Below are positions 8,762-63,619 of a stretch of DNA of 64,000 bases, piece by piece (position 1 is the first letter of the stretch; each line of letters begins with the position of its first letter). The position numbers were made by a program, and so were the translations under genes. Source of the DNA: Ruditapes philippinarum (lineage: Eukaryota). The stretch spans positions 62,001 through 126,000 of the forward strand of contig NW_026866698.1 of the NCBI RefSeq assembly GCF_026571515.1. The letters are read 5' to 3'. Under the pieces are notes generated by a model. It was not told the origin of the DNA, did not search any database, and saw only the letters and a list, made by a program, of their open reading frames with translations.

Positions 8762-9423
8762 ACTTAAGGGATTTCAACCAAATTTTTACAGAATGTAAAA
8801 TCTCCGGCGCATAGTATCATGATTTTGGGATTTGTTAATTTTTAACAGAATTGTGACTTTTCGCATTTTGTGAAGATTAAAACCCGGTCGATATTTTTAC
8901 AATTTCCTGTTATATTAAATACAATGTACATGTGATAGTAAATAAAATAATGCTGATTGTTGCTTGTGTATCTATATGGAAACTGAATGTATTTCTATAT
9001 ATATTTCTTTTGTTTCAATGATTTATTTATTATCACCATATCCTAACAACAGCTGGTCTACTATATAGCAAATTTAAACCACTATCTCTTTTGTGTTAAA
9101 TTTAGCGCTGCTAGTTTGTACATGTAGAGCCTTTAACACAGATGAAGTCCTCCTATTTTGACTGTGTCATGACTGCTGTAGATAAAAGCATAAAATTGAA
9201 GATAAAGGCGTTACGTTTAGGGCTGAAGGTCAATTTAAATTTATCATTCAGTTATATGTTTAAGTGGACCTCATATTTGAACTGCGGGTTTAACAGCGTT
9301 TGTAGATAATGATTTGTGGATGCCGCACGATAGTGGAATGTGTGTGTAAAGTCATAGATAACGACACTCTTCGTGAAGGGATTGTCTCAAACGTTGACAA
9401 AACCGCGGAAAAATGGCTGTCAC

Positions 9424-10000
9424 TGCGATATATGTGTGCATGACTATTGTAGTATTACATTTCATTGCGAGACATTCGTTCATTGCGATATGCCGCTAAA
9501 TTCATGTACGCGCTTCCATTGCGATATTCCGCTGTGCATTCATGTACGCCCGTTCATTGCGATAGGCTTTGCACGTTCATTGCGATATGCGTGTACATCG
9601 CGATTGTAGTATATATGTATTACATTGCGAGGCATGCGTTCATTGCGATATGCCGCTGCACTCATGTACGCGCGTTCATTGGGATATGCGCGTACATTGC
9701 TTTATTTGCATTCATTTTTCTATTTATGTATTACATTGAAAGCTTTGCTCTATTTATGTAATACATTGCAAGCTTTGCGTTCATAATGATGTGTGTTTTT
9801 ATTGCTGTACATGCGTTCATTGGTGTTTTGCTTTGTTGGATTTCAAGCCACACTGACATCGTAAAAGTTGTTTATTGTAATGTATGCATGCTGCTGTAAT
9901 TGTAATATATTCGTGCATTGCGACAATTGCCGTGCATTGCGACAATTGCCGTGCATTGCGACAATTACCCGTGCATTGCGACAATAGCCCGCATTGCGAT
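9424..10000. repeat. Degenerate CATTGCGA-based minisatellite, including ~4 copies of a 19-20 bp unit GTGCATTGCGACAATTGCC at 9913-9999
   Basis: CATTGCGA(T/C) recurs more than 10 times in a region that is CpG-rich relative to its flanks. Confidence 0.75.
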
Positions 10001-10461
10001 ACACGTGCTTTACGTGAGTGAATAAGATCGAAAATCTAATCATTTTACAAAAGCATAAGTAAAAACCAATAAAGCAACCATTGCAGCACATAAAACTTGT
10101 CCAAACACTTGTTCTGTTTTTATCTACAAAGCTTAACTGTAATGAATTTGTTTTGATTACTTATCCCGTTTTAAACTGGGGAATTTGTTTTAGAAGATCT
10201 TTGAGTCTGGTCTAAAGTGTTTTGATATTGAGAACACGTCTACAGTACAATTATTCAGCCTGAACGCGGATGTTAAATTTGGCCTTATTTTATATACTTA
10301 TTGCAATAGAGGTTTTATTGTAGTGCTTTTATTTGGCGGAATTTGATTCCAGTTTCAAAAATGAATATTTCATAATAGCTGTTTAATTACGAGCACGTGT
10401 TTTGTACTATAATTTGATGAAAGTGATAAATTACATGTAGTACTGAACCCGATTTAACATA

Positions 10462-10641
10462 CAGTCAAACCCACGTTAAAGACCATCTCTAAGTACAGAC
10501 CACCCTGCAAATAAAGCCACATTTCGACAAATCGTCATTGATTAAAAAGAACAAAGTAACCTCTAAATAAAGTCCACTTGTCTATAGAGGCCATGTTCTG
10601 TCACTAACTTGGATTACCTGTTTGTTCACAAGTTTGACTGT
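10462..10641. mobile_element. Tc1/mariner-type MITE (CAGTCAAAC...GTTTGACTG); related copy at 24383-24536
   Basis: TA|CAGTCAAACC...AAAGACCA internal repeats...AAGTTTGACTG. The second copy reads TA|CAGTCGAACC...AGGTTTGACTG|TA with a TA duplication. Confidence 0.7.
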
Positions 10642-11464
10642 CTAATGATTACGTAATGATTACAGAACTTTCTTTACCTACCGTTTACTAGTTTTCTTTA
10701 TTTAATATAATAAACATGTTTCCCGTTTCGTGCAGAATAATTAAAATTTTTCCTTAATTGAAAATGCGTATGAAAAGGAAAAAAAAACAACAGTGCTTGA
10801 TTTTCAAGTACCATCTACTTATGTTAAAGTAGTTTATTTGACATTGTGTCAAATGACATTTATTTTTAATGATTCCCGGAAAATTATGTTGAAGTGACTG
10901 TTGCTCAACGAATAGGAAGCAATAATTTAGTATTTATATTTACGTAGTTGAGTGGTATCGTTTTAAACATGTTGAGAATTTTAAATCATGAGAATTTTAA
11001 ATCATGAGAAGTTCCCTGTAGTTGTTGATATTAAATATACCGGAGATAGAATTTATCAATCAGCAATAGGACAAAAACTGATAATGAAATGTTAAAGACC
11101 TTATTTTCAGTTTTTTTTCAAAGTGTAAATAAAGCTACATGTATATATGAGTATCCTTTATGTCTAGCTTAGATATTTTTGCGCTCTTATGAAATTTATA
11201 CTGAATTTTAGACATAAATACAATGTGATTCCATGACACAAATGAGTAAGGATTTTTTTACTTGTATAGAAAAGTGAATGATGGATTGTGATTTAAAAAA
11301 AGAACGTGGACATTTTTATTCTTTTATTACGATTTCCTGGTATATTCCGACAAGGGTATACTGAAACATGTGATAAATATAAAGGGTGATAGGATTTAAA
11401 AATAAATCAAGAAGAGAAAAGAAATTTTAAAATAATTCGAGATCTAGAGTTCACATTTTTGTAC

Positions 11465-12847
11465 ATGATGAAGTACTATGCACGTGTTTTTGTGACTATT
11501 TATCTAATCCTTCTAACTGTGATATTACTATGGTGGAAACAGAGCAATGTGACAGTACAACTTGAAACATATGAGCAGCCCATAAAATTGTACAGACGGT
11601 ACAAAGCAGACGACAAAAGAGTCTTGAAACGTGACGTCATGTTGCTTCAAGAAGTTGCTATGGAAAAACAGGATTTCTTAAGGAACCGCCATCCGTACAT
11701 TTCATTCCTTATTGATGACCGTGTAAGACAGTGCGGTGGGCATTTTACCGGATATAAAAATCTGTTTGCAAAACTTGTTAATGTCTTAGTCGATCCTAGG
11801 TTTGCACGCGGGAAACATGGCGGCGAGAATATGTCGAAGGTCATGAATCAGGCCGAGGAAGAGGAATTTTACACGCTAGAGAAAGGTTTTTTTAATCTTC
11901 CCTGTACTCAACAAGTTAAATATGAGTTTGGAGTTGACAGTCATTTAAATAAATGGATTGAAACTATTGAATTAAGTACTGATTTCCCAAACCATTATGA
12001 GGCCCCTCAGTGGACCATCGCAGTGCAAAGGTATGAATATGTTAATATGTACCATACTATGACAGACTGGTACAATACATTTCTTGTTACAAAGGTATTT
12101 AAACTAGACCCTAAAAATGTAACCATTCTATGGATAGATGGCCATCCTGCAGGAGGGCTTGACGCCACATGGAGTACACTTTTTGGGGACATAAGACGAA
12201 TAGGAGAAATCCGAACACCAGTGTTGTTTCCTAATATGATTTGGGGCATTGTGGGATATGATAGTCCGCTTGATGAACATTATCTACCGGAAGTAGCATA
12301 TCTTGAAGAGTTTAGAAATTTCTTCCTGTCAAAACATAACATTGTACCCGAGGACTTTCCGAATTGTAATCAATTAAATATTTTGATAATCTGGAGAAGG
12401 GACTATGTCGCGCATCCAAGAAACCCAACCGGATCGGTTGTAAGAAAAATACAAAATGAGGACAAACTTTTAAAGAAAATCAAATCGTATTTCAACGGCC
12501 ATAATGTTAAAGGATTACAAATCGATAAACTTTCTATGCAAGATCAACTTGCAATTATATCAAAAACAGACATTTTAATAGGAATGCATGGCGCTGGACT
12601 GAGTCACACTTTATTTCTACCTCGTCACTCAGGGTTAATAGAACTCTTTCCTTTATATCATCCTGCAGAAAATATACATTTTAAGTCAATGGCGGAATGG
12701 AGACACATGCACTATATGTCGTGGAGTAATTTTAATGCAGAGAATGAACTTGACAATTATTTGACAGTTGTAAACGTTGATGAAATTGCCTTACTTGCCA
12801 TTGGAATGAAAAACAAAATTTGCAATGCTAACGAAAGTTTTAGGTGA
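11465..12847 (+). CDS. Glycosyltransferase family 61, type II Golgi membrane protein; beta-1,2-xylosyltransferase (plant XYLT)-like, 460 aa, intronless
   Basis: Single long ORF with the first ATG at 11465. It has a short basic tail and one TM helix (VFVTIYLILLTVILLWW). The GT61 C-terminal motif QLAIISKTDILIGMHGAGLSHTLF is present, along with XYLT-type motifs GGENMSKVMNQAEEEE, RYEYVNMYHTMTDWY, WIDGHP and RRDYVAHPR. Confidence 0.9.
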   Translation: MMKYYARVFVTIYLILLTVILLWWKQSNVTVQLETYEQPIKLYRRYKADDKRVLKRDVMLLQEVAMEKQDFLRNRHPYISFLIDDRVRQCGGHFTGYKNLFAKLVNVLVDPRFARGKHGGENMSKVMNQAEEEEFYTLEKGFFNLPCTQQVKYEFGVDSHLNKWIETIELSTDFPNHYEAPQWTIAVQRYEYVNMYHTMTDWYNTFLVTKVFKLDPKNVTILWIDGHPAGGLDATWSTLFGDIRRIGEIRTPVLFPNMIWGIVGYDSPLDEHYLPEVAYLEEFRNFFLSKHNIVPEDFPNCNQLNILIIWRRDYVAHPRNPTGSVVRKIQNEDKLLKKIKSYFNGHNVKGLQIDKLSMQDQLAIISKTDILIGMHGAGLSHTLFLPRHSGLIELFPLYHPAENIHFKSMAEWRHMHYMSWSNFNAENELDNYLTVVNVDEIALLAIGMKNKICNANESFR

Positions 12848-15118
12848 AAAATATATTTATTACTTTCCTTGCTTGTCTTGTCTTTTGTACATTTTGCATG
12901 ATATAATTTGATTGGCTAGACCTTAGAATCTGTCCGCAGCTATTTAAACATTATAATTTTACCCAATATTATTTTTTCAATATTTCTATTACTCTAAAAA
13001 ATCACACGGATTACTTCTAGGCGTAGGATTAGGGGTTAGAGTTAGAGTAATGGGTAATGTAAGGGTCAGAGGACAGATTCTAAAACTGCTCAAGTTTGAT
13101 TTTACCCATAGCCAGTTAAATATCTTCAGTCTTTCATCTTTCAGTCTAGATAAAACCATTACTCATTTTTAGAGAATTGTCACTAAATGTACTGACTGGA
13201 TATGGAATAGTGCATACCATAATCAGACTGTTGGCAGCACTGGTCATGTGGTTAGTAGTATCACTTGCCACCAGCAGGGTAAGGGTAAATGTTCGAATAA
13301 GCTTCTGTCTTCGATAGTACGTAATAAAAGAGTAACCGTTATATAGGGTTTGTCGTTATACAAGGTTTGTCAAGGATAATAAAGACGCTCATTTAACAAT
13401 GGTTGACATTAAACCCCTCTTGCGACAGGAAATAACACCATCATGTACGCGAAATATCGTTCTGTGTCCTGTTGCATATGCACTCAAATATTGTCGTTTT
13501 GCTGTCACTCGTTGTTGTTTCGTCTTGCCGCCCGCGGAAATTCCAAAATGTCAACATAGAACTACTATTATGTCGTAAACAGTATATAAAATAGCAACAT
13601 TCTCGTATGATACGAGGACGTATGTAATGGACGTATTCAACTGGTTCAAGGATGCAGCCGATTTGGCTGGTATTAATTAGTTAGTGTAGACCGAGGCAAA
13701 GTGAAACACTTTTTTGCTTTTATTGGTATTCTTTAAATATGATCGGCTCGGTTTTGAATATTTCTCTCTATTTCTCTAATATCTCTCTTTAACACAGATT
13801 GGTTTCTATTCTCCATTTCTGACTAAATACGTAAAATATTACAAAAACAAGTTGAGATTTTAGTTTAGAAAGTATAAGTGAACTGTTTTACTTTGCCCCG
13901 AGTACGTGGGCAAAGATAAACAGTTACTATAACCAAAACAAAATCTCTGAACGATAATTATATTCATTTTCTATTCAGAAATTTACATAAACAATTAGGA
14001 ATTTTGCGTTTATAGACATAGCGCTATATATTAATTATTTCGGATTCTAATACTTTTAAATCCTTTCGTACACGAGAGATTATTAATTGTGTGGCACTTA
14101 TTCAAATTTATTAATGTAAACAATCCTACACTTGAAACTTTGTTCTATATAAATAACATCTTGTATGTTATAAAAAAGTTTCACCAATGGTTTTAATATA
14201 CATATTGTAATATCAACAATTTACTATTAAAATGGTATGTTCAGAGTCGCGAATCTTTTTGATTGTCTTAAGCTTTCGAAAAGAGCCAACCATTGACATG
14301 TATTTTATAATATTGAATCAATTCTTCAACGGGGTTACTATCAACGCAATTTTAAGTGCCCGCTGTCATAGAACGATTCCCTATGTTTTTATGTTTTGTT
14401 GGGTTTTTTTTTGTTTTTTTTCGTTGTTGTTTTTTATTTTTGTTGTGTGTTTTTTTTCTTGTTGTTGTTGTTTTTTTAACGATGAGTTATTATGTCGGCG
14501 CAAATGTTTCGGTTTTCCTCAGTGATGCTGTTTTATTTACTCCATTACACCCTTTGTCACAAGTCATTGATAAAATATTAAATAACCCACTCATAAATTC
14601 ACATGTACGATTTGATCTTACGTGTATAATCTATATTTAATTGATTTCTGATAAGGGATATTTTTAGACACGCACTGCAACCCCTGCACACCGATGTGAC
14701 TTAGTATCGATCAAAAATTAAAATCATTTTTCATGAATCATGTGCTTACAGATCGTTAACTTTCGGTCCTTTAATTCCGACTTAAGTTCTATAAATCTTC
14801 AAGGATAGGCTATTCAAATAAATTAGCAACAATTTGAAAGAAGAAATGCCACAATGAATTGCATAAAATAAAGATAAAATGATGACGTACGTTGATTTTA
14901 TGGTATGCTATTGGTTCTAAAGACTAACTGAATAAATCTTTGGCTAAATATAGACTAATGTAAGTACATGTATACATAAAGGTAACGTATACAAACTAGT
15001 ATTCGCCAGATTCTTAAGTATGAGAACATAGGTAAATATATATACATCCGTATGTGTCTAACGATTTCGTTCACTTTTCCAAGCCTGATCGTATTAGCAT
15101 ATTTCCATTTCTGTTACT

Positions 15119-16176: not shown

Positions 16177-17044
16177 TATTGTTTAATTTGAAGTCTATAA
16201 ATAACATATAATACAGATATTGTGTGTTTTAAGCTAAATTTCACTTATTTTATTAGTTATCTATTTAAATTTGACATTCCTAAACGATTTATTCATATCA
16301 AATTTACGCACATATATATCTTGATAGTGAAAAAGTCATACGACTGACACCATAAATTATATCAAAATATCATAAGATCGGTTTTGATAACATGTATTCG
16401 TATATAGTTAATATAATACAAATGTATATCAAAGTTGATTGATTATAATTACACAACTATAGTGTGGTTATTTTTGCAAAGCGGAGATTTTGATATTTTG
16501 GAAACATTTTGAAAGCTAGAATCAGATAATAAAGGTGAGTTGAAACATTTTTTTTCATTTTAACGTTTTATCATAAACTTTAGGGTAGTGTTTTTCTATC
16601 CATTTCAAAAATAACTCCTGTTTTCCTGTACATTTCTTGATCTTCCGACATCATTGATTCGACACCACACCGTTCAATCTGAAACGGGGAAAGAAATGAA
16701 AGTTTGGTGAAATCAAGTTAACACTTTCAATGTCCAGCTGAATATGTCATTCGTCGATTTCTAATTTAAGTCATACTAGAGGTATCAGAAGTTCACCATA
16801 ATGCACAGTCTTTTGTATGTCGCGGACTTTAATCGAGCCAGTATTTTGATGTGTTTCAACCTTAAGTTTTATAATATATGTATACCTTTGGTTGAAGGGT
16901 TGGTATGACAACTATTGAAATATTCAAATCTTCAAATCTAGGATTAATAGTGGTACCTAGTGTAGTTTATTTATAAACAATTGTGTTCCACATTTTTGTT
17001 TTTTGTTGTTGTTTTTTCAGGTTCAGAAAAATCAAAGTGTAATT

Positions 17045-20000
17045 ATGTCAGGGGATGATGATTTTCAAGACAGTTTTAGGTCAGACCAACCTGGACATGT
17101 CCAATGTGACTATGACACTGTTAGCATACCCGGGTCCATTTTGGAGCAGAAAGTTAGAATACACGACCGTAGATCAATCGACACGCCAGTAGGCGGATCT
17201 TATTATGAATCCTCGCTGCCAAACTTAGCTGAGTCTGTGAATTCAAACAGCGTTTATTTGGTGAAATACGAACCTTCTTTTTCTGCCCGTAAATGGTTGG
17301 TTGGACCGTACTGTTTCTTATATATGGCAGCGTATATTACTTCATATTTTACATTTATACAATACGTGTACGCAAAGATACAAAAAGATTTGTTTCCCGA
17401 CGTAACGTCTTTCAATGTCTCAGGAACTTGTAATTCCAATTTAAGCTCAGAGGATTATAAAAAGCAGACTTTGGTTCAACAACATGCCGCAAATTGGACC
17501 ATGTATTATAGTTTAGCAGCTGGTATTCCAGCAATTTTATCAAACATTATTCTTGGATCATCAACTGACAAGTACGGCAGAAAGTTTTTGTTCTTCTTGC
17601 CATGTATCGGAACATTTCTTAAAACGGTATTATATGTTCTTGGAATTCATCTGAACTTGGATTTAAAATTCTATTTAATTGGTTATTTCATAGAGGGGCT
17701 TACTGGTCAAATGTTTACAATGTTACTTGTAAGTTTTACGTATGTTGCGGATATTACTGCTACAAATGGGAAAAATAGGTCATTTGGAATAACTTTGATA
17801 GAATTATCATTAGGAATAGCAGTTGCCCTGTTCAGCTTTACAACTGGATACTTCATTCAAGCATACGGTTTCTTTTATCCAATGTTATCTTCAGGCGTCA
17901 TGACAACCGGAAGTTTAATTACAGTTATATTTATTCCTGAAACCTTTCCCAAAGAAAAAAGAAACCCAAACGAATCGATTCTAATCAAACTGAAAACTGC
18001 GTACGATTTATTTTTCGGATCTTTTAATCGAGGACGTCGCTGGATGTATAACATTTTGATGGTAACGTTCACTTTAACCATGTTTACAGTGTTCGGGCGG
18101 AGCAGCGTCGAACCCTTGTATCAGTTAGGCACGCCATTCTGTTGGAGCCCAGAGAAGTTAGGCTATTATGGTGGCCTTAAAAGTCTCTTGCAACAAATGA
18201 TTGGTATGGGAATGGTAAAATTGATGCAGTGGATAATGTCTGATGAAGCCATAGCAATGTTCGGATGTCTGTCTTTTTCTGCAGCATATGTTATGGAAGG
18301 CTTTGCCCGAACAGACATTATAATGTATCTAGGTAAACAAGTTCAATGTTCTCGTATACATTTATAGAATTATTTTTTTTTATATAAATAAGTGACCTAC
18401 TCGTTATTGGTAGATGGCAATGATAAAAACCCAACTGTTTCAACACCTAGATAGGACCTTTTCTTTCTGTTGACCATTTACCTTCCGGAGTCAAAAATGT
18501 TTTCCATGTTTAGCAAGTGCGGTATGACCTGGCTTTGCTCAAATTTGTATTGTATTATAATTAATATCCATTTAAATATGAATGGAATTTCCAAAATGTC
18601 ATTTTAAGATGAATGAAACTGGAAAAATAGTCATCAAGTTAGGTGTTCATAACTTTTTCTTTAATCATTTTTTATTTTCTATGAAATTTACAGATGTAAT
18701 TCTAGACATGACTGTCTTCTCTATACATATATAGAACATTCTGTACATTGAATTATTGTAATTCCTCTTTCGTTGGTACATTTGCTACATCAATATTTGG
18801 GTTTTCTTTTTTTATTTTACAAAGTCTTGTTTATCGATTCAGTTCCAGTGGTCGGTGCATGGGGGCTTCTGACCATTCCAATGTGCAGATCCATCATGTC
18901 CGGATTAACCAGATCTGACCAACAAGGTATTACTTGAAGCAGTTCACATTACTTTTACAGTCTTTTAATACATCCAGTATATGGCAAGTGCACGATTTTT
19001 TGTAGATAAAGCAAAACAGTTTCCTCAAGCGGTCAAGATCTTATCACTCGGTAGTCTTTTCACGGTGCCTATACCATGTTATATTTTGTCATCTGCGTGA
19101 GGAAGAACACGAATACTAATGCAGGTTTCATATACTGTCATAACATTTTCAATATTTTATGGGATAAAGTGTAGGGCGAGTAAACCATACAAAGAATGTT
19201 CCTGCAAAAATAAATATTTATTTTCATAAAATGAAAGCGCGTGTGAATATTTGATTGATCAAACACGCGTTTGAACTTTCTATTGCATTGTTTTGTTGTT
19301 TATCATTATTATTTGGCCCGCGCGGATCATAAAATGTCATGTGGTAAAGGGCACCGTGTTTTCATTGCATTAAGTTTGGCTATAATCCGAAACTTAACAG
19401 AAATAGAAATAAATCTAGTATGATAATATACATGCATGATTATCTAGTATGATAATATACTAACATAATTATACCCAAGATCTGCCAAGAAAGAATAATG
19501 AATTCGAATTTTTTTATATTTCATTTCTGTTTTGTTTTTAATATCTTTGATATGATAGGTATATATGGATTGTAACAGAATCTGAACAATTTTAAAAATC
19601 TCTAATACATTGTATTTTTATTCATTTTTTTTTCTTCACTTTTTGTTATTTTTTATTATTTTTCACCAGGAGCTATATTTGCTGCTATTGCTGCCATGGA
19701 GACGGCGATCAATCTGGGTGGTTCCGTGGCAGCCAATGAGATTTACTCACATACTGTCGGCTTTTACAGAGGCTTTGTGTTCTTCATTTTCGCAGGCTGC
19801 TGCGGCATAGGCTTCTTTCTAATATGGTAAATATTGGATTCTTACTTAGACTTTTGAAATATTGTTTGACCCTCTGCTTGTAATTATTTTGGAACGTGGG
19901 CTCAATTTTAACTTAAATATATATGTTCATTGGTTATTGCGAACAAACATAGAGTTTTATCAATTTTGCAAATTTGTATACCTACCAGAGAAACTAACTT

Positions 20001-49500: not shown

Positions 49501-51803
49501 CAAGTAATAACATGTTATGTGTGATTAATGACTGATTTTTCAGTACTCATCACCTATTTCTACTGCATTACTAACTCAGTATGGGCTATTTTTGCACATT
49601 TTCACCCAATTTCAGTAATTTATGTCGACTGTTATTGTTTTCAATTTGTAATTTAATACCTTTGTTCACTTCACAATATTTACTTTTTCACACATGTACG
49701 TTTTCAAAATTATTAAGAAAAGTTGCATGAATCTGGAAGCATGCTACTTTAAAGCTGGGCAAGATCAGCTTGAAACGCCTCTAACAACTTACATGTCTCA
49801 TTATCCGCGACATCCTGGCCTTGAAACCAATTTGTGAAGATCTAGAAAGGTGTTGAAAACTGCCGTTGAGTATTTGTTGAAACTGTTTATCTGAAACCAT
49901 GGTTTCATCTCCGCTATTGACTCTTTCGTTCTCCCACCAGGGGATCACTCCTGGGATACCACATGCAGGTCCCGCCTCATGGAAGAAGTCACTCTGCTCA
50001 TCATCAGCTAGACAAACATTAGGACAAATTGTGGATGTTATTATGTTCAGCAAAACTACATAGAAAACAATATACACGCATACTTTTTGACAGTCAATGT
50101 ACAAAATTCAAAATCACTGTATGAAGTTTTGTTTGGATGATTGGGTTTTAAGTCGACCAACACAGTATAAGTCATATGGCGATGTTCCAGCTTTACTGGT
50201 GGAGGGCGACCTCAGGTGCTCTTCCATGATGCATTATTTCAGGCACGAACAAGCACCTGAATAGAACCACAGCCAAAGAGTTTTAGGATTATTTATTTAT
50301 ATATAAGACAATGACAATAAGCATGTATACTTAGTTCGCAGTGATTACCTTTTATAGTTTCTGAAAAAATGGACTGTCACAAAAAATGTATCCAATGCCA
50401 ATGCAAACAATTGCTCTACTTTTCTTCTTCTAAAACTGGAGCAAATAAGGTTAAAACAAATAAAAGATACCTTCATGTGTTACACAATATTCATCGCCTG
50501 ATATTGACTCACTACTGCTGCTCAGTGTTGAACTACTTCCCTCTCTAGAAAAGATGATAATACATTCATTTCAGTTTTGAATATTATCAATGAATTAAAT
50601 TTGGTTGAGTTTTCAGCCACGCCAACAGGGTAAAGGCCATAAAGTGACTTTCTGGCATTAATGGCAGATGAAGACCTTGGATGCCACCTGTGCATCATTC
50701 CAGTCAAACTGGGATTAGAGTAAAACTACCAAACATAAGCAAGCCTGTTGCATAGCGTCCATACTCGAAAATATTCATACTCAATAGTCCTGTGAAGGAT
50801 TCAAACTTTCAGCAGTGAAGGACAGATGATTACGTCAGTAACCTTAACCACTCATTGTTATTGAACATATGTTTGTTTAAAATTTTCATGAAATTGCACA
50901 CATGTTAAATGAACATATATAATATATATATGTAGCAATTTAGCATAAAAAGTATCAAACTTTTGAGCTAAAGATTTTGATGTTAATTAAGTACAAAGTA
51001 ACTTCCTCTGAATGAAAGTTTATTATATATATATCAAAAATTACATACTGTGAGTTCATCGCAGAGTCCATTGCATCATCATCTTTACAGCAATCTTCAG
51101 TCCTATTCTGATCTGTTCCAGTTCCATAATCTGTTTTAGGTCTGATACTACGCTTTCTCTTGCCAGGAACCATCTCATCTATACCTGACTCCTTCATCTG
51201 ATGCATAAAACCACTACCATCCATTGGGCTGGTACCCATACTACAATGAGGAAGTTTAACAGTCTTACTCCTCTGTCTGTTGTATTTTGGTTTACCCTGC
51301 TGGACAGGTGAGTCATGCTGCGAGGAAGACGGATCGGGATCTATGGCCATTGATTTGTATTTTTTTCTACGTCTCTGCGGTCGTATTGGTGAAAACATTG
51401 ACTCATTGACCGAATCTGACTCCACCTGAGAGGGAACATAATTTATGTTCAATGGCATAGTGAGTCTAACTATATGATGAGCAATAGCTAAATCATCTGA
51501 GTCGCTCTGAGCAATGTTTTCCATGTAGTCTTTGATTGCTTCATCGATACTGCTTTGTGAAGCTTCACTCATATTTCCTAAGTCCGGCTGATGTCTTTTC
51601 CGCCTACCCTTTCTTTTTCTTGGAAGACGTCGTGTGCTAGAAGACGATGCCCCGTGTCCCCCGTCACTTTTGGAACGTTTATGACTAGCGGCATCCTCAA
51701 GAGCTAGGCTGAGGTCATGTACGAGGTCGTCCATTTTGCCAATGGAACTTGAGAACACTCGTAGCCGTTCAAAGTCTGTCACTATGTTATTCTCCATGAG
51801 CAT
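46513..51803 (-). CDS. GPATCH2: G-patch domain-containing protein 2, 6 coding exons, ~516 aa (493 aa if started at ATG 51734)
   Basis: Minus-strand exons 51049-51803, 50471-50544, 49793-50007, 48772-48816, 48140-48314 and 46513-46799 have consistent phases. Motifs MDDLVHDLSLALE, VESDS...RPQRRRKKYKSMAID and ADDEQSDFFHEAGPACGIPGVIPWWE are GPATCH2-like. The C-terminal G-patch reads PIPESNIGNRMLQSMGWSPGQGLGADGAGIRTPV...RQGFG. Confidence 0.92.
49051..49348. mobile_element. TTAA-associated MITE (Kolobok-like family D)
   Basis: TTAA|AGGGACTCAACTGAGG ... CCTCAGTGGAGTTCT|TTTA, imperfect TIRs. Confidence 0.55.
50128..50272 (-). mobile_element. 3' half of Meta/MESC-type SINE; a further degenerate SINE lies at ~50600-50855
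   Basis: Reverse complement of GTGCCTGAAATAATGCA...GCACCTGAGGTC..CCTCCACCAGTAAAGCTGGAA. Confidence 0.7.
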
Positions 51804-61789: not shown

Positions 61790-63619
61790 ATGGCTGATAG
61801 TGAAAAATCTGAAGTATTGTTTCAATTTCTTCAGTGCATACACAGCAAGACTATATTCAAACAGGACAGAGAACAAATTGCAGATCTTGAACAAGGGGTT
61901 AAAAAGATGATAGAGAAAATTATTGATGTTTACTACTCGAAAAGTAAATATGACTTTGATAAACTAATTCATGTTGGAAGTTCATTTGAAGGCTCAAAGA
62001 TAATATCACCAAATGAGTTTGACTTCATGTTGGTACTAAAAGGTCTGTCTGAACCAGGAAAAGTTTTCATTGAGCCTGGTTGTCAACCAGGAATGAAGCT
62101 GTTAAGGTATAAAAAGTTTAAGAGGAAACACATGAAAGGCCCGAATTTGGTTTTAAACAACATGCTAGGACTTGAAATAGATTCTCTAATGACAAGCAGC
62201 GACGAAAAGAGAGCAAAGTACAATAGCATTAGAATCCAAACATCATTAGGAGAGCTCCGTATTAAGAACATGTTTCGTTATACATTACATTTGGAATGTA
62301 TCAGTCAAGAAAGTAGCTTTGATATAGACGTTGACCTCATGCCAAGTGTAAGAATACCACCAGATTCAAAGGAAATTATGAAAGATATTATGACGTGTCC
62401 TGTAGAAATAAAAGATTTGGCATTCAAGGATGGTTGTTTCTTGGTTGGAAAATTCTGTATTATAGATGGCATGTGTTGGCAGTTATCATTTGCAGCCGCT
62501 GAAAGGAATATGATGAAATCTTTATCACCAGGCCATATGAAAATATACAGAGTACTGAAATATCTTTTTGTTGAGAAATCTATAATTGGCATTTGTGATC
62601 TGATGTCGTCATATGTACTGAAAACTGCAGTTTTAAGACATGCATACTTTGAATGTGATAATAATTCAAAACCAACCACATGTTTCATAGCAATCATACG
62701 ATCATTATCAATATCAATCGAATCAGCATTTATGAAATCTTTGTTTCTTCCCTCTCTTAATTTATGGCAGAGAGTCATTCATGAAAAAATGAGAAATATA
62801 ACAGAGAACGAAACTATCTGTGAAAAATCAGTGAAAGAACAACTCTCTGAAATCATAAGAACTGAAGGCAAAGGTCTGAAGTATGCTGTTTATATATCGG
62901 TTATATTTGAATTCTGGAAACGTGTTTTTATTCTATTAGCATGCTTGTTCGAAAAAGTAGAAGACGGAACAATACATTTTAATTCAATGGAAAATGCCTT
63001 ACGAATTATTTACACCAAGTTAAATGAAGAGGACGAAGAGGATGACATTGTGAAAGATTACTTTCAACAAGATGTAATTGCTTCTGACGACAAAGTCTTA
63101 CATGACAATGATTGGAGCATTCGTAAGTTTCATACAAAGTCTGATGTGAAGGAAACTCCTGAACAACCAAGAGTAAGTTCATTTGAACTAAATGAAAATA
63201 CATGTAAAATGAATGGTTTACACGCAGACAGTGAGACTACAAGTGAAAAGATTGACGTTGCGGGCGAATGTGTTGATGTTGAGGAAGAGTCACAAGATTT
63301 GAGAGACATTGAACAGTTTGTTAACGATTATGTTGAAGAAACTGGAGAACATTTTGAATCAGATGAAGAGTGGATGACAGATACTGACGACTCATGTGAT
63401 GACATCAGTGAAATATCTGAGGATGAATTGTTTGTACAAGCTCATCAAGAGGATGTATATGAGATGTATGCTAAGCATGGAGATGTCATCAGGACTATAA
63501 ATATTCCAGTTTTTTCCACATTTTTGCAACAAATTTCGGATCGAGAACAGTGCATGTCCATTCAACGAATTGTTGAACAGTTCAATGTACCTTCAGGGTC
63601 ACATAGATCCAGTACCTAA
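61790..63619 (+). CDS. Mab-21 domain nucleotidyltransferase / cGAS-like receptor (cGLR) with acidic C-terminal extension, 609 aa, single coding exon
   Basis: NTase signature VGSSFEGSKIISPNEFDFMLVL (G63-S64, E76, D78) and third acidic residue in DIDVDLMP (D182). Mab-21 motifs WQLSFAAAERNMM, YRVLKYL, SSYVLKTAVL and SLFLPSLNL are present. The ATG context is AAAATGG. A splice acceptor near 61648 indicates upstream 5' UTR exon(s). Confidence 0.9.
   Translation: MADSEKSEVLFQFLQCIHSKTIFKQDREQIADLEQGVKKMIEKIIDVYYSKSKYDFDKLIHVGSSFEGSKIISPNEFDFMLVLKGLSEPGKVFIEPGCQPGMKLLRYKKFKRKHMKGPNLVLNNMLGLEIDSLMTSSDEKRAKYNSIRIQTSLGELRIKNMFRYTLHLECISQESSFDIDVDLMPSVRIPPDSKEIMKDIMTCPVEIKDLAFKDGCFLVGKFCIIDGMCWQLSFAAAERNMMKSLSPGHMKIYRVLKYLFVEKSIIGICDLMSSYVLKTAVLRHAYFECDNNSKPTTCFIAIIRSLSISIESAFMKSLFLPSLNLWQRVIHEKMRNITENETICEKSVKEQLSEIIRTEGKGLKYAVYISVIFEFWKRVFILLACLFEKVEDGTIHFNSMENALRIIYTKLNEEDEEDDIVKDYFQQDVIASDDKVLHDNDWSIRKFHTKSDVKETPEQPRVSSFELNENTCKMNGLHADSETTSEKIDVAGECVDVEEESQDLRDIEQFVNDYVEETGEHFESDEEWMTDTDDSCDDISEISEDELFVQAHQEDVYEMYAKHGDVIRTINIPVFSTFLQQISDREQCMSIQRIVEQFNVPSGSHRSST

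What the first reader, a model, noticed from the sequence alone, without database searches (positions are those of the whole stretch)
11465..12847. Candidate for the molluscan N-glycan core beta-1,2-xylosyltransferase: a GT61 with plant XYLT-type motifs
Seen: an intronless type II membrane GT61. Its motifs (GGENMSKVMNQAEEEE, RYEYVNMYHTMTDWYNTF, IDGHP, RRDYVAHPR, GMHGAGLSH) match my recollection of Arabidopsis XYLT (GGEKLEEVMGRKEEEE, RFEYANLFHTVTDWYSAY, VDGHC, RREDYLAHPR, GAHGAGLTH). They fit much less well with the usual animal GT61s, EOGT and POMGNT2. Established: core beta-1,2-xylose, a cross-reactive IgE epitope, occurs on N-glycans of plants, snails and schistosomes. To my knowledge the animal enzyme has not been biochemically assigned to a gene. 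Inference: this gene may encode that activity, through patchy retention or old horizontal transfer; the lack of introns fits transfer or retroposition.
Basis: partly seen in the sequence, partly recalled or inferred. Interest (0 to 1): 0.8.

Follow-up and report, generated by a model that had tools for sequence, protein, structure and literature searches.

The report
Clam XYLT-type GT61 glycosyltransferase gene
This is a real, expressed clam gene for a Golgi sugar-transferase of the same subfamily as the plant enzyme that puts xylose on N-glycan cores. That makes it a reasonable candidate for the animal enzyme, which has not yet been tested, but it is one of many paralogues, and the family was already flagged in the literature and in database annotation.

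Summary
Window 11465-12847(+) is one uninterrupted 460-aa ORF for a type II membrane GT61 protein.

It is not EOGT or POMGNT2. The same 1.41-Gb clam genome has clear orthologues of both elsewhere. The gene belongs to a third GT61 branch, found here only in spiralians (molluscs, annelids, nemerteans, flatworms, a brachiopod). Sources already name members 'beta-1,2-xylosyltransferase RCN11-like' or 'glycoprotein 2-beta-D-xylosyltransferase'.

All six UDP-binding or catalytic residues of EOGT are conserved (N194, H197, R311, R327, Q361, H381). The predicted fold is GT-B.

Three limits apply:
- The genome holds 14 XYLT-type loci, and five are co-orthologues of the gastropod gene, so no single gene can be called 'the' enzyme.
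- Intronless ORFs are the rule for GT61 in this genome, EOGT and POMGNT2 included, so they say nothing about transfer or retroposition.
- Schistosome papers proposed this family as the animal core xylosyltransferase in 2014, and a fluke paper did so in 2022.

No recombinant animal enzyme was found in the searchable literature. I could not fetch a labelled plant XYLT, so the plant grouping rests on indirect evidence. Verdict: a new member of a known candidate family, of modest interest.

The parts
11465..12847 (+). Complete single-exon CDS (460 codons plus stop) of the XYLT-type GT61 glycosyltransferase
   Evidence: ORF list; Pfam PF04577 at 3.1e-15; the identical protein is on record as P0001
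11110..12931 (+). Approximate extent of RNA-seq coverage, taken as the transcript. The 5' end lies somewhere in 11110-11182 and the 3' end near 12931.
   Evidence: read laying depth table and contig pieces (X1: 11182-11859 ... 12611-12931; X3: 11408-12738). No joints; flanks have little or no depth
11449..11453 (+). Possible alternative 5'-UTR splice acceptor (an AG at 11449-11450), 12 nt upstream of the ATG
   Evidence: 3 reads of run X23 have unmatched upstream letters ending at 11453 (table 7); sequence read. Weak evidence: the reads could come from an allele or a paralogue.
11468..11542 (+). N-terminal signal-anchor (residues 2-26, hydrophobic helix): type II membrane topology
   Evidence: Translation; AlphaFold helix H2-26 followed by a low-pLDDT stem at 28-50
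11543..11719 (+). Stem region (about residues 27-85), poorly conserved. It carries all 3 non-synonymous polymorphisms seen.
   Evidence: pLDDT 42-59 over residues 30-70; SNP classification
11720..12775 (+). Luminal GT-B catalytic domain (about residues 86-437)
   Evidence: pLDDT above 90; Foldseek matches POMGNT2 at E=3e-16; homologue alignments span residues 72-456
12044..12055 (+). N194-M-Y-H197: the Asn of the N-R-R UDP-binding triad and the putative catalytic-base His (EOGT N245/H248; POMGNT2 N163/H166)
   Evidence: phmmer alignment to 9wjk_A, with residue roles taken from PMC13123520. N194 is nearly invariant in 96 homologues; H197 is conserved in every core-clade sequence compared.
12395..12445 (+). 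R311 ... R327, the two Arg of the N-R-R triad (EOGT R372/R377). They flank an 11-residue insertion, D313-G323 (DYVAHPRNPTG, nt 12401-12433), that EOGT and POMGNT2 lack.
   Evidence: Alignments; R311 and R327 are invariant in 96 sequences
12545..12607 (+). Q361 (EOGT Q412) through GMHGAGLSH, ending at H381 (EOGT H432): the uridine-contacting residues

Best explanation
The gene encodes an active Golgi type II membrane enzyme. It is an inverting GT-B glycosyltransferase of the XYLT-type branch of family GT61.

Shown here:
- The ORF is intact, transcribed, and under purifying selection across the catalytic domain.
- The UDP-binding N-R-R triad, the neighbouring His, and the uridine-contacting Gln and His are all conserved.
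- The gene is distinct from the clam's own EOGT and POMGNT2.
- It sits in the slowly evolving 'core' spiralian clade that roughly follows species phylogeny. That clade includes the genes of snails with measured beta-2-Xyl-transferase activity (Lymnaea) and of oysters whose relatives carry xylosylated N-glycan cores.

Inferred by homology only: it takes UDP-xylose in the Golgi lumen and adds beta-1,2-xylose to the beta-mannose of N-glycan cores that GnT-I has already acted on, as plant XYLT and the Lymnaea activity do. It would then be one of up to five isoenzymes in this clam (L003 is the window gene; the others are L001, L005, L007 and L009).
For: - Gene and fold: ORF and motifs; GT61 domain; model at pLDDT 91 with a GT-B fold matching POMGNT2 at E=3e-16.
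- Catalytic residues: N194, H197, R311, R327, Q361 and H381 align with EOGT N245, H248, R372, R377, Q412 and H432. R311, R327 and Q361 are invariant in 96 homologues.
- Not EOGT or POMGNT2: the true EOGT (L006, 2.8e-177) and POMGNT2 (L015, 6.5e-95) lie elsewhere in the genome. The window protein scores only 7.8e-13 and 2.8e-8 against them.
- Trees: an XYLT-type clade is separated from EOGT (SH-aLRT 100). Spiralians are monophyletic (97). The window gene sits in a core clade (94) with Lymnaea, Aplysia, Pomacea, Haliotis, oyster, annelid, nemertean, flatworm and brachiopod genes.
- Source names: 'beta-1,2-xylosyltransferase RCN11-like', 'beta-(1,2)-xylosyltransferase-like', 'glycoprotein 2-beta-D-xylosyltransferase' and 'XYLT'.
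- ESM Atlas: the second and third nearest clusters are from Streptophyta, and one is named beta-(1,2)-xylosyltransferase-like.
- Expression: RNA contigs from several studies cover the gene.
- Selection: 21 synonymous against 3 non-synonymous variants, with none non-synonymous in the catalytic domain.
- Literature: beta-2-Xyl-transferase activity in Lymnaea (Mulder 1995, cited in PMC8699351); 42% of C. gigas N-glycans are core-xylosylated (PMC10301044); schistosome homologues have been proposed as the core XylT (PMC4122909).
Against: - No biochemical data exist for any animal member.
- Donor and acceptor cannot be read from the sequence.
- There are 14 XYLT-type loci in this genome and five co-orthologues. 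This invites sub- or neofunctionalisation, and plant GT61 members show the fold can serve quite different acceptors such as xylan (PMC13123520).
- N-glycan xylose has not been reported for this clam or its family. One oyster study cited in PMC10301044 found none.
- No labelled plant XYLT could be placed in my trees, so the link to the characterised enzyme is indirect.
Confidence: 0.5

Rival explanations
1. It is an active XYLT-type GT61 transferase, but a neofunctionalised paralogue. It would act on a different acceptor (another position on N-glycans, O-glycans, glycolipids or a polysaccharide) or use a different UDP-sugar. Another paralogue, or none in this species, would do the core beta-1,2-xylosylation.
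For: - The family is large: 14 loci, tandem arrays and an Imparidentia-specific duplication that separates the window gene's subclade from L001/L005/L007/L009.
- Characterised plant GT61 enzymes act on several different acceptors and donors (PMC13123520; bioRxiv 10.1101/2025.07.18.665579).
- Core xylose is not documented in venerid-like clams.
Against: - The window gene has a short branch inside the conservative core clade and keeps every catalytic residue. The clearly divergent paralogues (L004, L011, L012) are the ones that have changed the His.
- Orthologues are retained in Mercenaria, Mactra, Dreissena and Mya.
Confidence: 0.38
2. The gene entered the animal lineage by horizontal transfer from a plant or alga, or it is a recent retrogene. 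The lack of introns would be the trace of that event.
For: - The CDS is a single exon.
- Among named animal hits the family is seen only in Spiralia.
- The nearest non-animal look-alikes are from plants and oomycetes.
Against: - Almost all 16 GT61 loci in the genome, including the EOGT and POMGNT2 orthologues, are uninterrupted ORFs.
- There is no poly(A) tract after the 3' end and no GC break against the flanks.
- The core clade roughly follows spiralian phylogeny with deep divergences, so any transfer would predate Spiralia and cannot be told from ancient retention with losses.
- The non-spiralian relatives are only about 30% identical.
Confidence: 0.07
3. It is an EOGT- or POMGNT2-like GlcNAc-transferase acting on proteins (EGF domains or O-mannose).
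For: [quoted passage not shown] The only solved relatives are EOGT and POMGNT2.
Against: - True orthologues of both exist elsewhere in the genome, with E-values 80 to 160 orders of magnitude better.
- The window protein has a membrane anchor rather than the EOGT-type signal peptide.
- It carries an 11-residue insertion and a GGE...NQxE motif that both enzymes lack.
- It is separated from EOGT with 100% SH-aLRT.
Confidence: 0.03

Closest known systems
[quoted passage not shown]
   Same: - Both are type II Golgi GT61 proteins.
- Source annotations of close homologues point to it by name.
- ESM-feature neighbours are Streptophyta XYLT-like clusters.
- Unlabelled non-spiralian XYLT-type relatives share the family signature: GGE...E motif, RYEYAN.YH, DGH, and the AHPRNP insertion between the two Arg.
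- The product, core beta-1,2-Xyl, is known in molluscs.
   Different: - No labelled plant sequence could be aligned here.
- Identity to the nearest non-spiralian relatives is only about 30%.
- The animal family is massively expanded (14 loci in this genome).
- The activity of any animal member is untested.
Schistosoma and Cardicola putative beta-1,2-xylosyltransferases (Sjp_0055390, Smp_125150, CfXylT2)
   Same: They belong to the same spiralian GT61/DUF563 family and carry the same homology-based candidacy for core xylosylation (PMC4122909; PMC9565688). A flatworm member (Macrostomum) falls in the same core clade as the window gene.
   Different: They are trematode genes, not molluscan, and they too are uncharacterised. 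I did not have those sequences in hand.
EOGT (EGF-domain O-GlcNAc transferase, GT61; PDB 9wjk)
   Same: It has the same GT-B fold and the same UDP-contacting residues, N-R-R plus His, Gln and His.
   Different: - Similarity is only E=7.8e-13.
- EOGT is a soluble ER protein with a signal peptide.
- It lacks the 11-residue insertion and the GGE motif.
- The clam's real EOGT is L006.
POMGNT2 (GT61; PDB 6xfi, 7e9j)
   Same: It is the best structural match for the model (Foldseek E=3e-16, TM about 0.5) and has a conserved Asn/His/Arg core.
   Different: - Sequence identity is 15-16%.
- Sequence similarity is detected only over residues 327-429.
- The clam's real POMGNT2 is L015.
- Its acceptor is different (O-mannosyl peptide).

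Membership tests
CAZy GT61 / Pfam PF04577 (Glyco_transf_61) | Pfam domain match above the gathering score | tested here: met
   57.1 bits against a cut-off of 27, E=3.1e-15, residues 284-392
CAZy GT61 / Pfam PF04577 (Glyco_transf_61) | [quoted passage not shown] | tested here: met
   AlphaFold2 model at pLDDT 91.4 and pTM 0.83. Foldseek top hits are all POMGNT2, E=3e-16 to 2e-13. This is a predicted model, not an experimental structure.
CAZy GT61 / Pfam PF04577 (Glyco_transf_61) | N-R-R constellation for UDP binding plus the adjacent His (PMC13123520) | tested here: met
   N194, R311, R327 and H197 align with EOGT N245, R372, R377 and H248. R311 and R327 are invariant and N194 nearly invariant in 96 homologues.
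Core beta-1,2-xylosyltransferase (XYLT, EC 2.4.2.38, KEGG K03714) | Phylogenetic grouping with experimentally characterised plant or algal core XylT, to the exclusion of EOGT, POMGNT2 and xylan-type GT61 | tested here: inconclusive
   Exclusion from EOGT and POMGNT2 is shown. The gene groups with unlabelled non-spiralian XYLT-type proteins (SH-aLRT 91). Names and Atlas neighbours point to plant XYLT. No labelled plant or algal sequence appeared in any result list, and no xylan-type GT61 was included.
Core beta-1,2-xylosyltransferase (XYLT, EC 2.4.2.38, KEGG K03714) | Type II Golgi membrane topology | tested here: met
   N-terminal hydrophobic helix at residues 2-26, a disordered stem, then the luminal catalytic domain. 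Golgi localisation itself was not tested.
Core beta-1,2-xylosyltransferase (XYLT, EC 2.4.2.38, KEGG K03714) | Uses UDP-xylose as donor | not testable with these tools
   No sequence rule separating UDP-Xyl from UDP-GlcNAc use in this branch is available. It needs an enzyme assay.
Core beta-1,2-xylosyltransferase (XYLT, EC 2.4.2.38, KEGG K03714) | Transfers Xyl in beta-1,2 linkage to the beta-Man of GnT-I-processed N-glycan cores | not testable with these tools
   Such an activity is known in Lymnaea extracts (Mulder 1995, via PMC8699351), but it has not been linked to a gene.
Core beta-1,2-xylosyltransferase (XYLT, EC 2.4.2.38, KEGG K03714) | The product (core-xylosylated N-glycans) is present in the source organism | not tested
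   It is known in gastropods and oysters. I found no N-glycome for this clam or its family.
EOGT | Orthology to EOGT (reciprocal high similarity over the full length) | tested here: not met
   The window protein scores 7.8e-13 over residues 193-421. The genome's L006 scores 2.8e-177 over the full length. The two clades are separate.
POMGNT2 | Orthology to POMGNT2 | tested here: not met
   The window protein scores 2.8e-8 over residues 327-429 only. The genome's L015 scores 6.5e-95 over the full length.

The most novel reading that the evidence does not exclude
This gene, or its four co-orthologues, is the long-sought animal N-glycan core beta-1,2-xylosyltransferase. The 14-member spiralian expansion of XYLT-type GT61 would then also contain enzymes with new acceptor specificities that help explain the unusual diversity of mollusc glycans. 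The subfamily would be an ancient eukaryotic one, kept in plants, stramenopiles and spiralians and lost from other animals.
Probability: 0.4. Interest if true: 0.5.

Novelty: new member of a known kind. Interest (0 to 1): 0.3.

Why it matters
Core beta-1,2-xylose is a cross-reactive carbohydrate determinant shared by plants, snails and schistosomes. According to the papers I could search, no animal gene for it has been confirmed by recombinant assay (PMC6935376 in 2019; nothing later). A short, intronless, expressed clam gene from the conservative core clade is a convenient construct for that assay.

The candidate family has been named since 2014, public annotation already labels its members, and this clam offers five equally placed candidates. 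The finding therefore sharpens an existing hypothesis rather than opening a new one. The useful additions from this work are:
- Intronlessness is no evidence of transfer.
- The family splits into a conservative core clade and several divergent paralogue lineages. Some of those lineages have lost the putative catalytic His.

Tried and rejected
**Attempts to fetch a labelled plant or algal XYLT for the tree**
1. The word-index search with the window protein listed only spiralians down to 4e-100.
2. The exhaustive representative search gave a top 150 of spiralian-type or unlabelled proteins down to 3e-59.
3. A search with the GC-rich relative P0165, which I guessed was algal, returned the same spiralian set. 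That guess is rejected.
4. A length-filter trick with the 992-aa fusion protein P0121 listed all 50 hits. It revealed four unlabelled non-spiralian XYLT-type proteins but no named plant.
5. Three cluster look-ups added few names.

**Other steps that led nowhere**
- The Atlas did not hold P0319.
- Two paper searches failed on syntax.
- The first FastTree placed the gastropod genes away from the window gene. The mixture-model trees did not reproduce this, so I dropped that reading.
- I considered that the many partly fitting raw reads and the loose ends inside the ORF might mark introns. I rejected this because the ORF is continuous and RNA contigs are colinear. Reads from paralogues or divergent alleles explain them better.
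- I looked for a poly(A) remnant of retroposition and found none.

Full report
**1. Observation**

The six-frame ORF list shows one long frame at 11459-12847(+).
- Pfam finds Glyco_transf_61 at 57 bits against a cut-off of 27.
- An AlphaFold2 model built on 96 homologues is confident (pLDDT 91.4). It shows an N-terminal helix (2-26), a disordered stem (28-50) and a two-lobed Rossmann-type catalytic domain.
- Foldseek's only strong matches are POMGNT2 crystal structures, at E=3e-16.
- The gene's GC content matches its surroundings.

**2. Expression and selection**

Twenty public runs from ten studies hold the stretch; four of them are on record as RNA and ten more are guessed to be RNA. Four runs were laid on 9300-14700.
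- Depth is concentrated between about 11110 and 12930. Elsewhere it is low or absent.
- RNA-library contigs are colinear with the genome across the whole ORF.
- No splice joint is reported.
- Three reads have a loose end at 11453, right after an AG. This allows an alternative 5'-UTR intron.
- Many raw reads fit only partly. With 14 paralogues in the genome, I attribute this to cross-mapping or divergent alleles.

Of the 24 variant positions that these runs show inside the ORF, 21 are synonymous. The 3 non-synonymous ones all lie in the stem, at residues 40, 72 and 76. The catalytic domain is therefore under purifying selection.

**3. What family it belongs to**

Against solved structures, the protein hits mouse EOGT at only 7.8e-13 and POMGNT2 at 2.8e-8. 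A profile of the family improves this to 2e-29 and 6e-18.

The window's own genome is 1.41 Gb in 15,874 contigs. It has 16 GT61 matches.
- L006 is a full-length EOGT orthologue (2.8e-177).
- L015 is a POMGNT2 orthologue (6.5e-95).
- The other 14, including the window gene (L003), form a third branch.

The word-index and exhaustive searches found hundreds of relatives (308 and 197 significant hits; 323 representatives at E<=1e-30). Every named one comes from Mollusca, Annelida, Nemertea, Platyhelminthes or Brachiopoda. Several carry these names:
- 'beta-1,2-xylosyltransferase RCN11-like' (Haliotis, Gigantopelta, Aplysia)
- 'beta-(1,2)-xylosyltransferase-like' (Pomacea, Lingula)
- 'glycoprotein 2-beta-D-xylosyltransferase' (JGI, Mytilus galloprovincialis)
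- 'XYLT' (Mytilus coruscus)

The ESM Atlas lists two Streptophyta clusters as the nearest after the protein's own cluster. One of them is named beta-(1,2)-xylosyltransferase-like (a lead, not a test).

**4. Phylogeny**

Mixture-model IQ-TREE trees (quick search, SH-aLRT support) give the following.
- EOGT forms its own clade (100).
- An XYLT-type clade (91) is made of four unlabelled non-spiralian proteins (95) and all spiralian proteins (97).
- Inside the spiralians, a 'core' clade (94) unites gastropods (Lymnaea, Aplysia, Pomacea, Haliotis), oysters, an ark clam, a cephalopod, annelids, nemerteans, a flatworm, a brachiopod and an Imparidentia bivalve clade (99).
- In that bivalve clade the window gene pairs with Mercenaria, then Mactra, then Dreissena plus Mya. 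A sister subclade holds the clam's L001, L005, L007 and L009.

The window gene is thus one of five co-orthologues of the single-looking gastropod gene. The remaining clam paralogues (L002/L008, L004/L012/L014/L016, L010, L011/L013) sit on long separate branches.

The four non-spiralian proteins are about 30% identical to the window protein. They share the GGE...E motif, RYEYAN.YH..TDW, DGH and the AHPRNP insertion. The Atlas puts one of them next to oomycete GT61 clusters and, by structure, next to the Streptophyta XYLT-like cluster.

**5. Catalytic machinery**

The 2026 EOGT structure paper (PMC13123520) defines N245, R372 and R377 (the 'N-R-R constellation'), H248, Q412 and H432 as the UDP-contacting or catalytic residues. 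It reports the triad in POMGNT2 and in plant GT61 as well. In the phmmer alignment these map to N194, R311, R327, H197, Q361 and H381 of the window protein.
- R311, R327 and Q361 are invariant, and N194 nearly invariant, in the 96-sequence alignment.
- All six residues are kept in every core-clade sequence examined except the C. virginica protein, which has F in place of H381.
- Several divergent clam paralogues replace the His with W, R or N.
- An 11-residue insertion between the two Arg (DYVAHPRNPTG) marks the XYLT-type branch. EOGT and POMGNT2 lack it.

**6. Mechanism**

By homology, this is a Golgi-lumen inverting transferase that binds a UDP-sugar through N-R-R/Q/H and uses H197 as the base.

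That the sugar is xylose and the acceptor is the beta-Man of GnT-I-processed N-glycans is an inference. It rests on subfamily membership and on glycobiology:
- a GnT-I-dependent beta-2-Xyl-transferase activity in Lymnaea (Mulder 1995, cited in PMC8699351);
- core xylose on 42% of C. gigas and 19% of O. edulis N-glycans (PMC10301044);
- core xylose in schistosomes and Cardicola.

I put this at about 0.5 for this particular paralogue.

**7. Origin**

- Nearly all GT61 loci here are uninterrupted ORFs, including the EOGT and POMGNT2 orthologues.
- No poly(A) remnant follows the 3' end.
- Orthologues exist in at least four other bivalve families, and the core clade roughly follows spiralian phylogeny.
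- Earlier notes of this scan also record other intronless and expanded glycosyltransferase families in this genome (I did not check them).

An origin before Spiralia, through ancient retention with losses or a very old transfer, remains open.

**8. Prior knowledge**

- Mickum et al. [quoted passage not shown] They call the schistosome genes likely candidates.
- A GT61 'CfXylT2' is listed for Cardicola (PMC9565688).
- Paschinger and Wilson 2019 (PMC6935376) say xylosyltransferase activities were detected but genes and recombinant enzymes were characterised only for core fucosylation.
- My searches to late 2026 found no later characterisation. The library covers only open-access papers.

**9. 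Limits**

- No labelled plant or algal XYLT sequence could be obtained. The result lists are capped and the spiralian family fills them.
- Tree support values come from quick searches.

**10. Verdict**

This is a real, expressed and probably active XYLT-type GT61 gene. It is a sound but not unique candidate for a function that is already hypothesised for the family. It is a new member of a known kind; interest 0.3.

Noticed in passing
window 17003-18367 (+): A 454-aa single ORF with a Major Facilitator Superfamily domain (PF07690, 1.1e-10) lies 4 kb downstream of the GT61 gene on the same strand. Its substrate is unknown and no link to the GT61 gene is shown.
   Followed up: partly
window 61790-63619 (+): A 609-aa uninterrupted ORF has Mab-21 nucleotidyltransferase and Mab-21_C domains, making it a cGAS-like (cGLR) candidate.
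   Followed up: partly
window 50955-51803 (-): A 282-aa Ser/Arg/Lys-rich ORF with no Pfam match. It may be an exon or a chance frame.
   Followed up: partly
G000 contig C6102 (L012, L014, L016, L004) and C4655 (L005, L007): There are tandem arrays of XYLT-type GT61 genes. Two members of the C6102 array (L014, L016) carry an in-frame stop and look like pseudogenes. L005 and L007 lie 6 kb apart and are nearly identical.
   Followed up: partly
L004, L012, L014, L016, L011 (own genome): These divergent paralogues replace the putative catalytic-base His (window H197) with W, R or N while keeping N-R-R. They may have lost or changed activity.
   Followed up: no
L006 and L015 (own genome): The clam's EOGT and POMGNT2 orthologues are also encoded by single uninterrupted ORFs of 523 and 622 aa.
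   Followed up: partly
P0121 (992 aa), P0125 (1029 aa), P0122, P0139, P0272 (1403 aa, Macrostomum): These long proteins from other organisms carry the XYLT-type domain at the C-terminus, behind 400-1100 residues of unexamined sequence. They may be fusions or long stems.
   Followed up: no
P0318-P0321 (unlabelled environmental proteins): These non-spiralian eukaryotic proteins carry the full XYLT-type signature at about 30% identity. One sits next to oomycete GT61 clusters in the ESM Atlas. This suggests the subfamily is wider than plants plus spiralians.
   Followed up: partly
window 11693, 11790, 12436, 12545 (read laying loose ends): Small groups of raw RNA reads from two 2026 runs diverge from the window sequence inside the ORF. 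They are probably reads from paralogues or divergent haplotypes, not splice sites.
   Followed up: no
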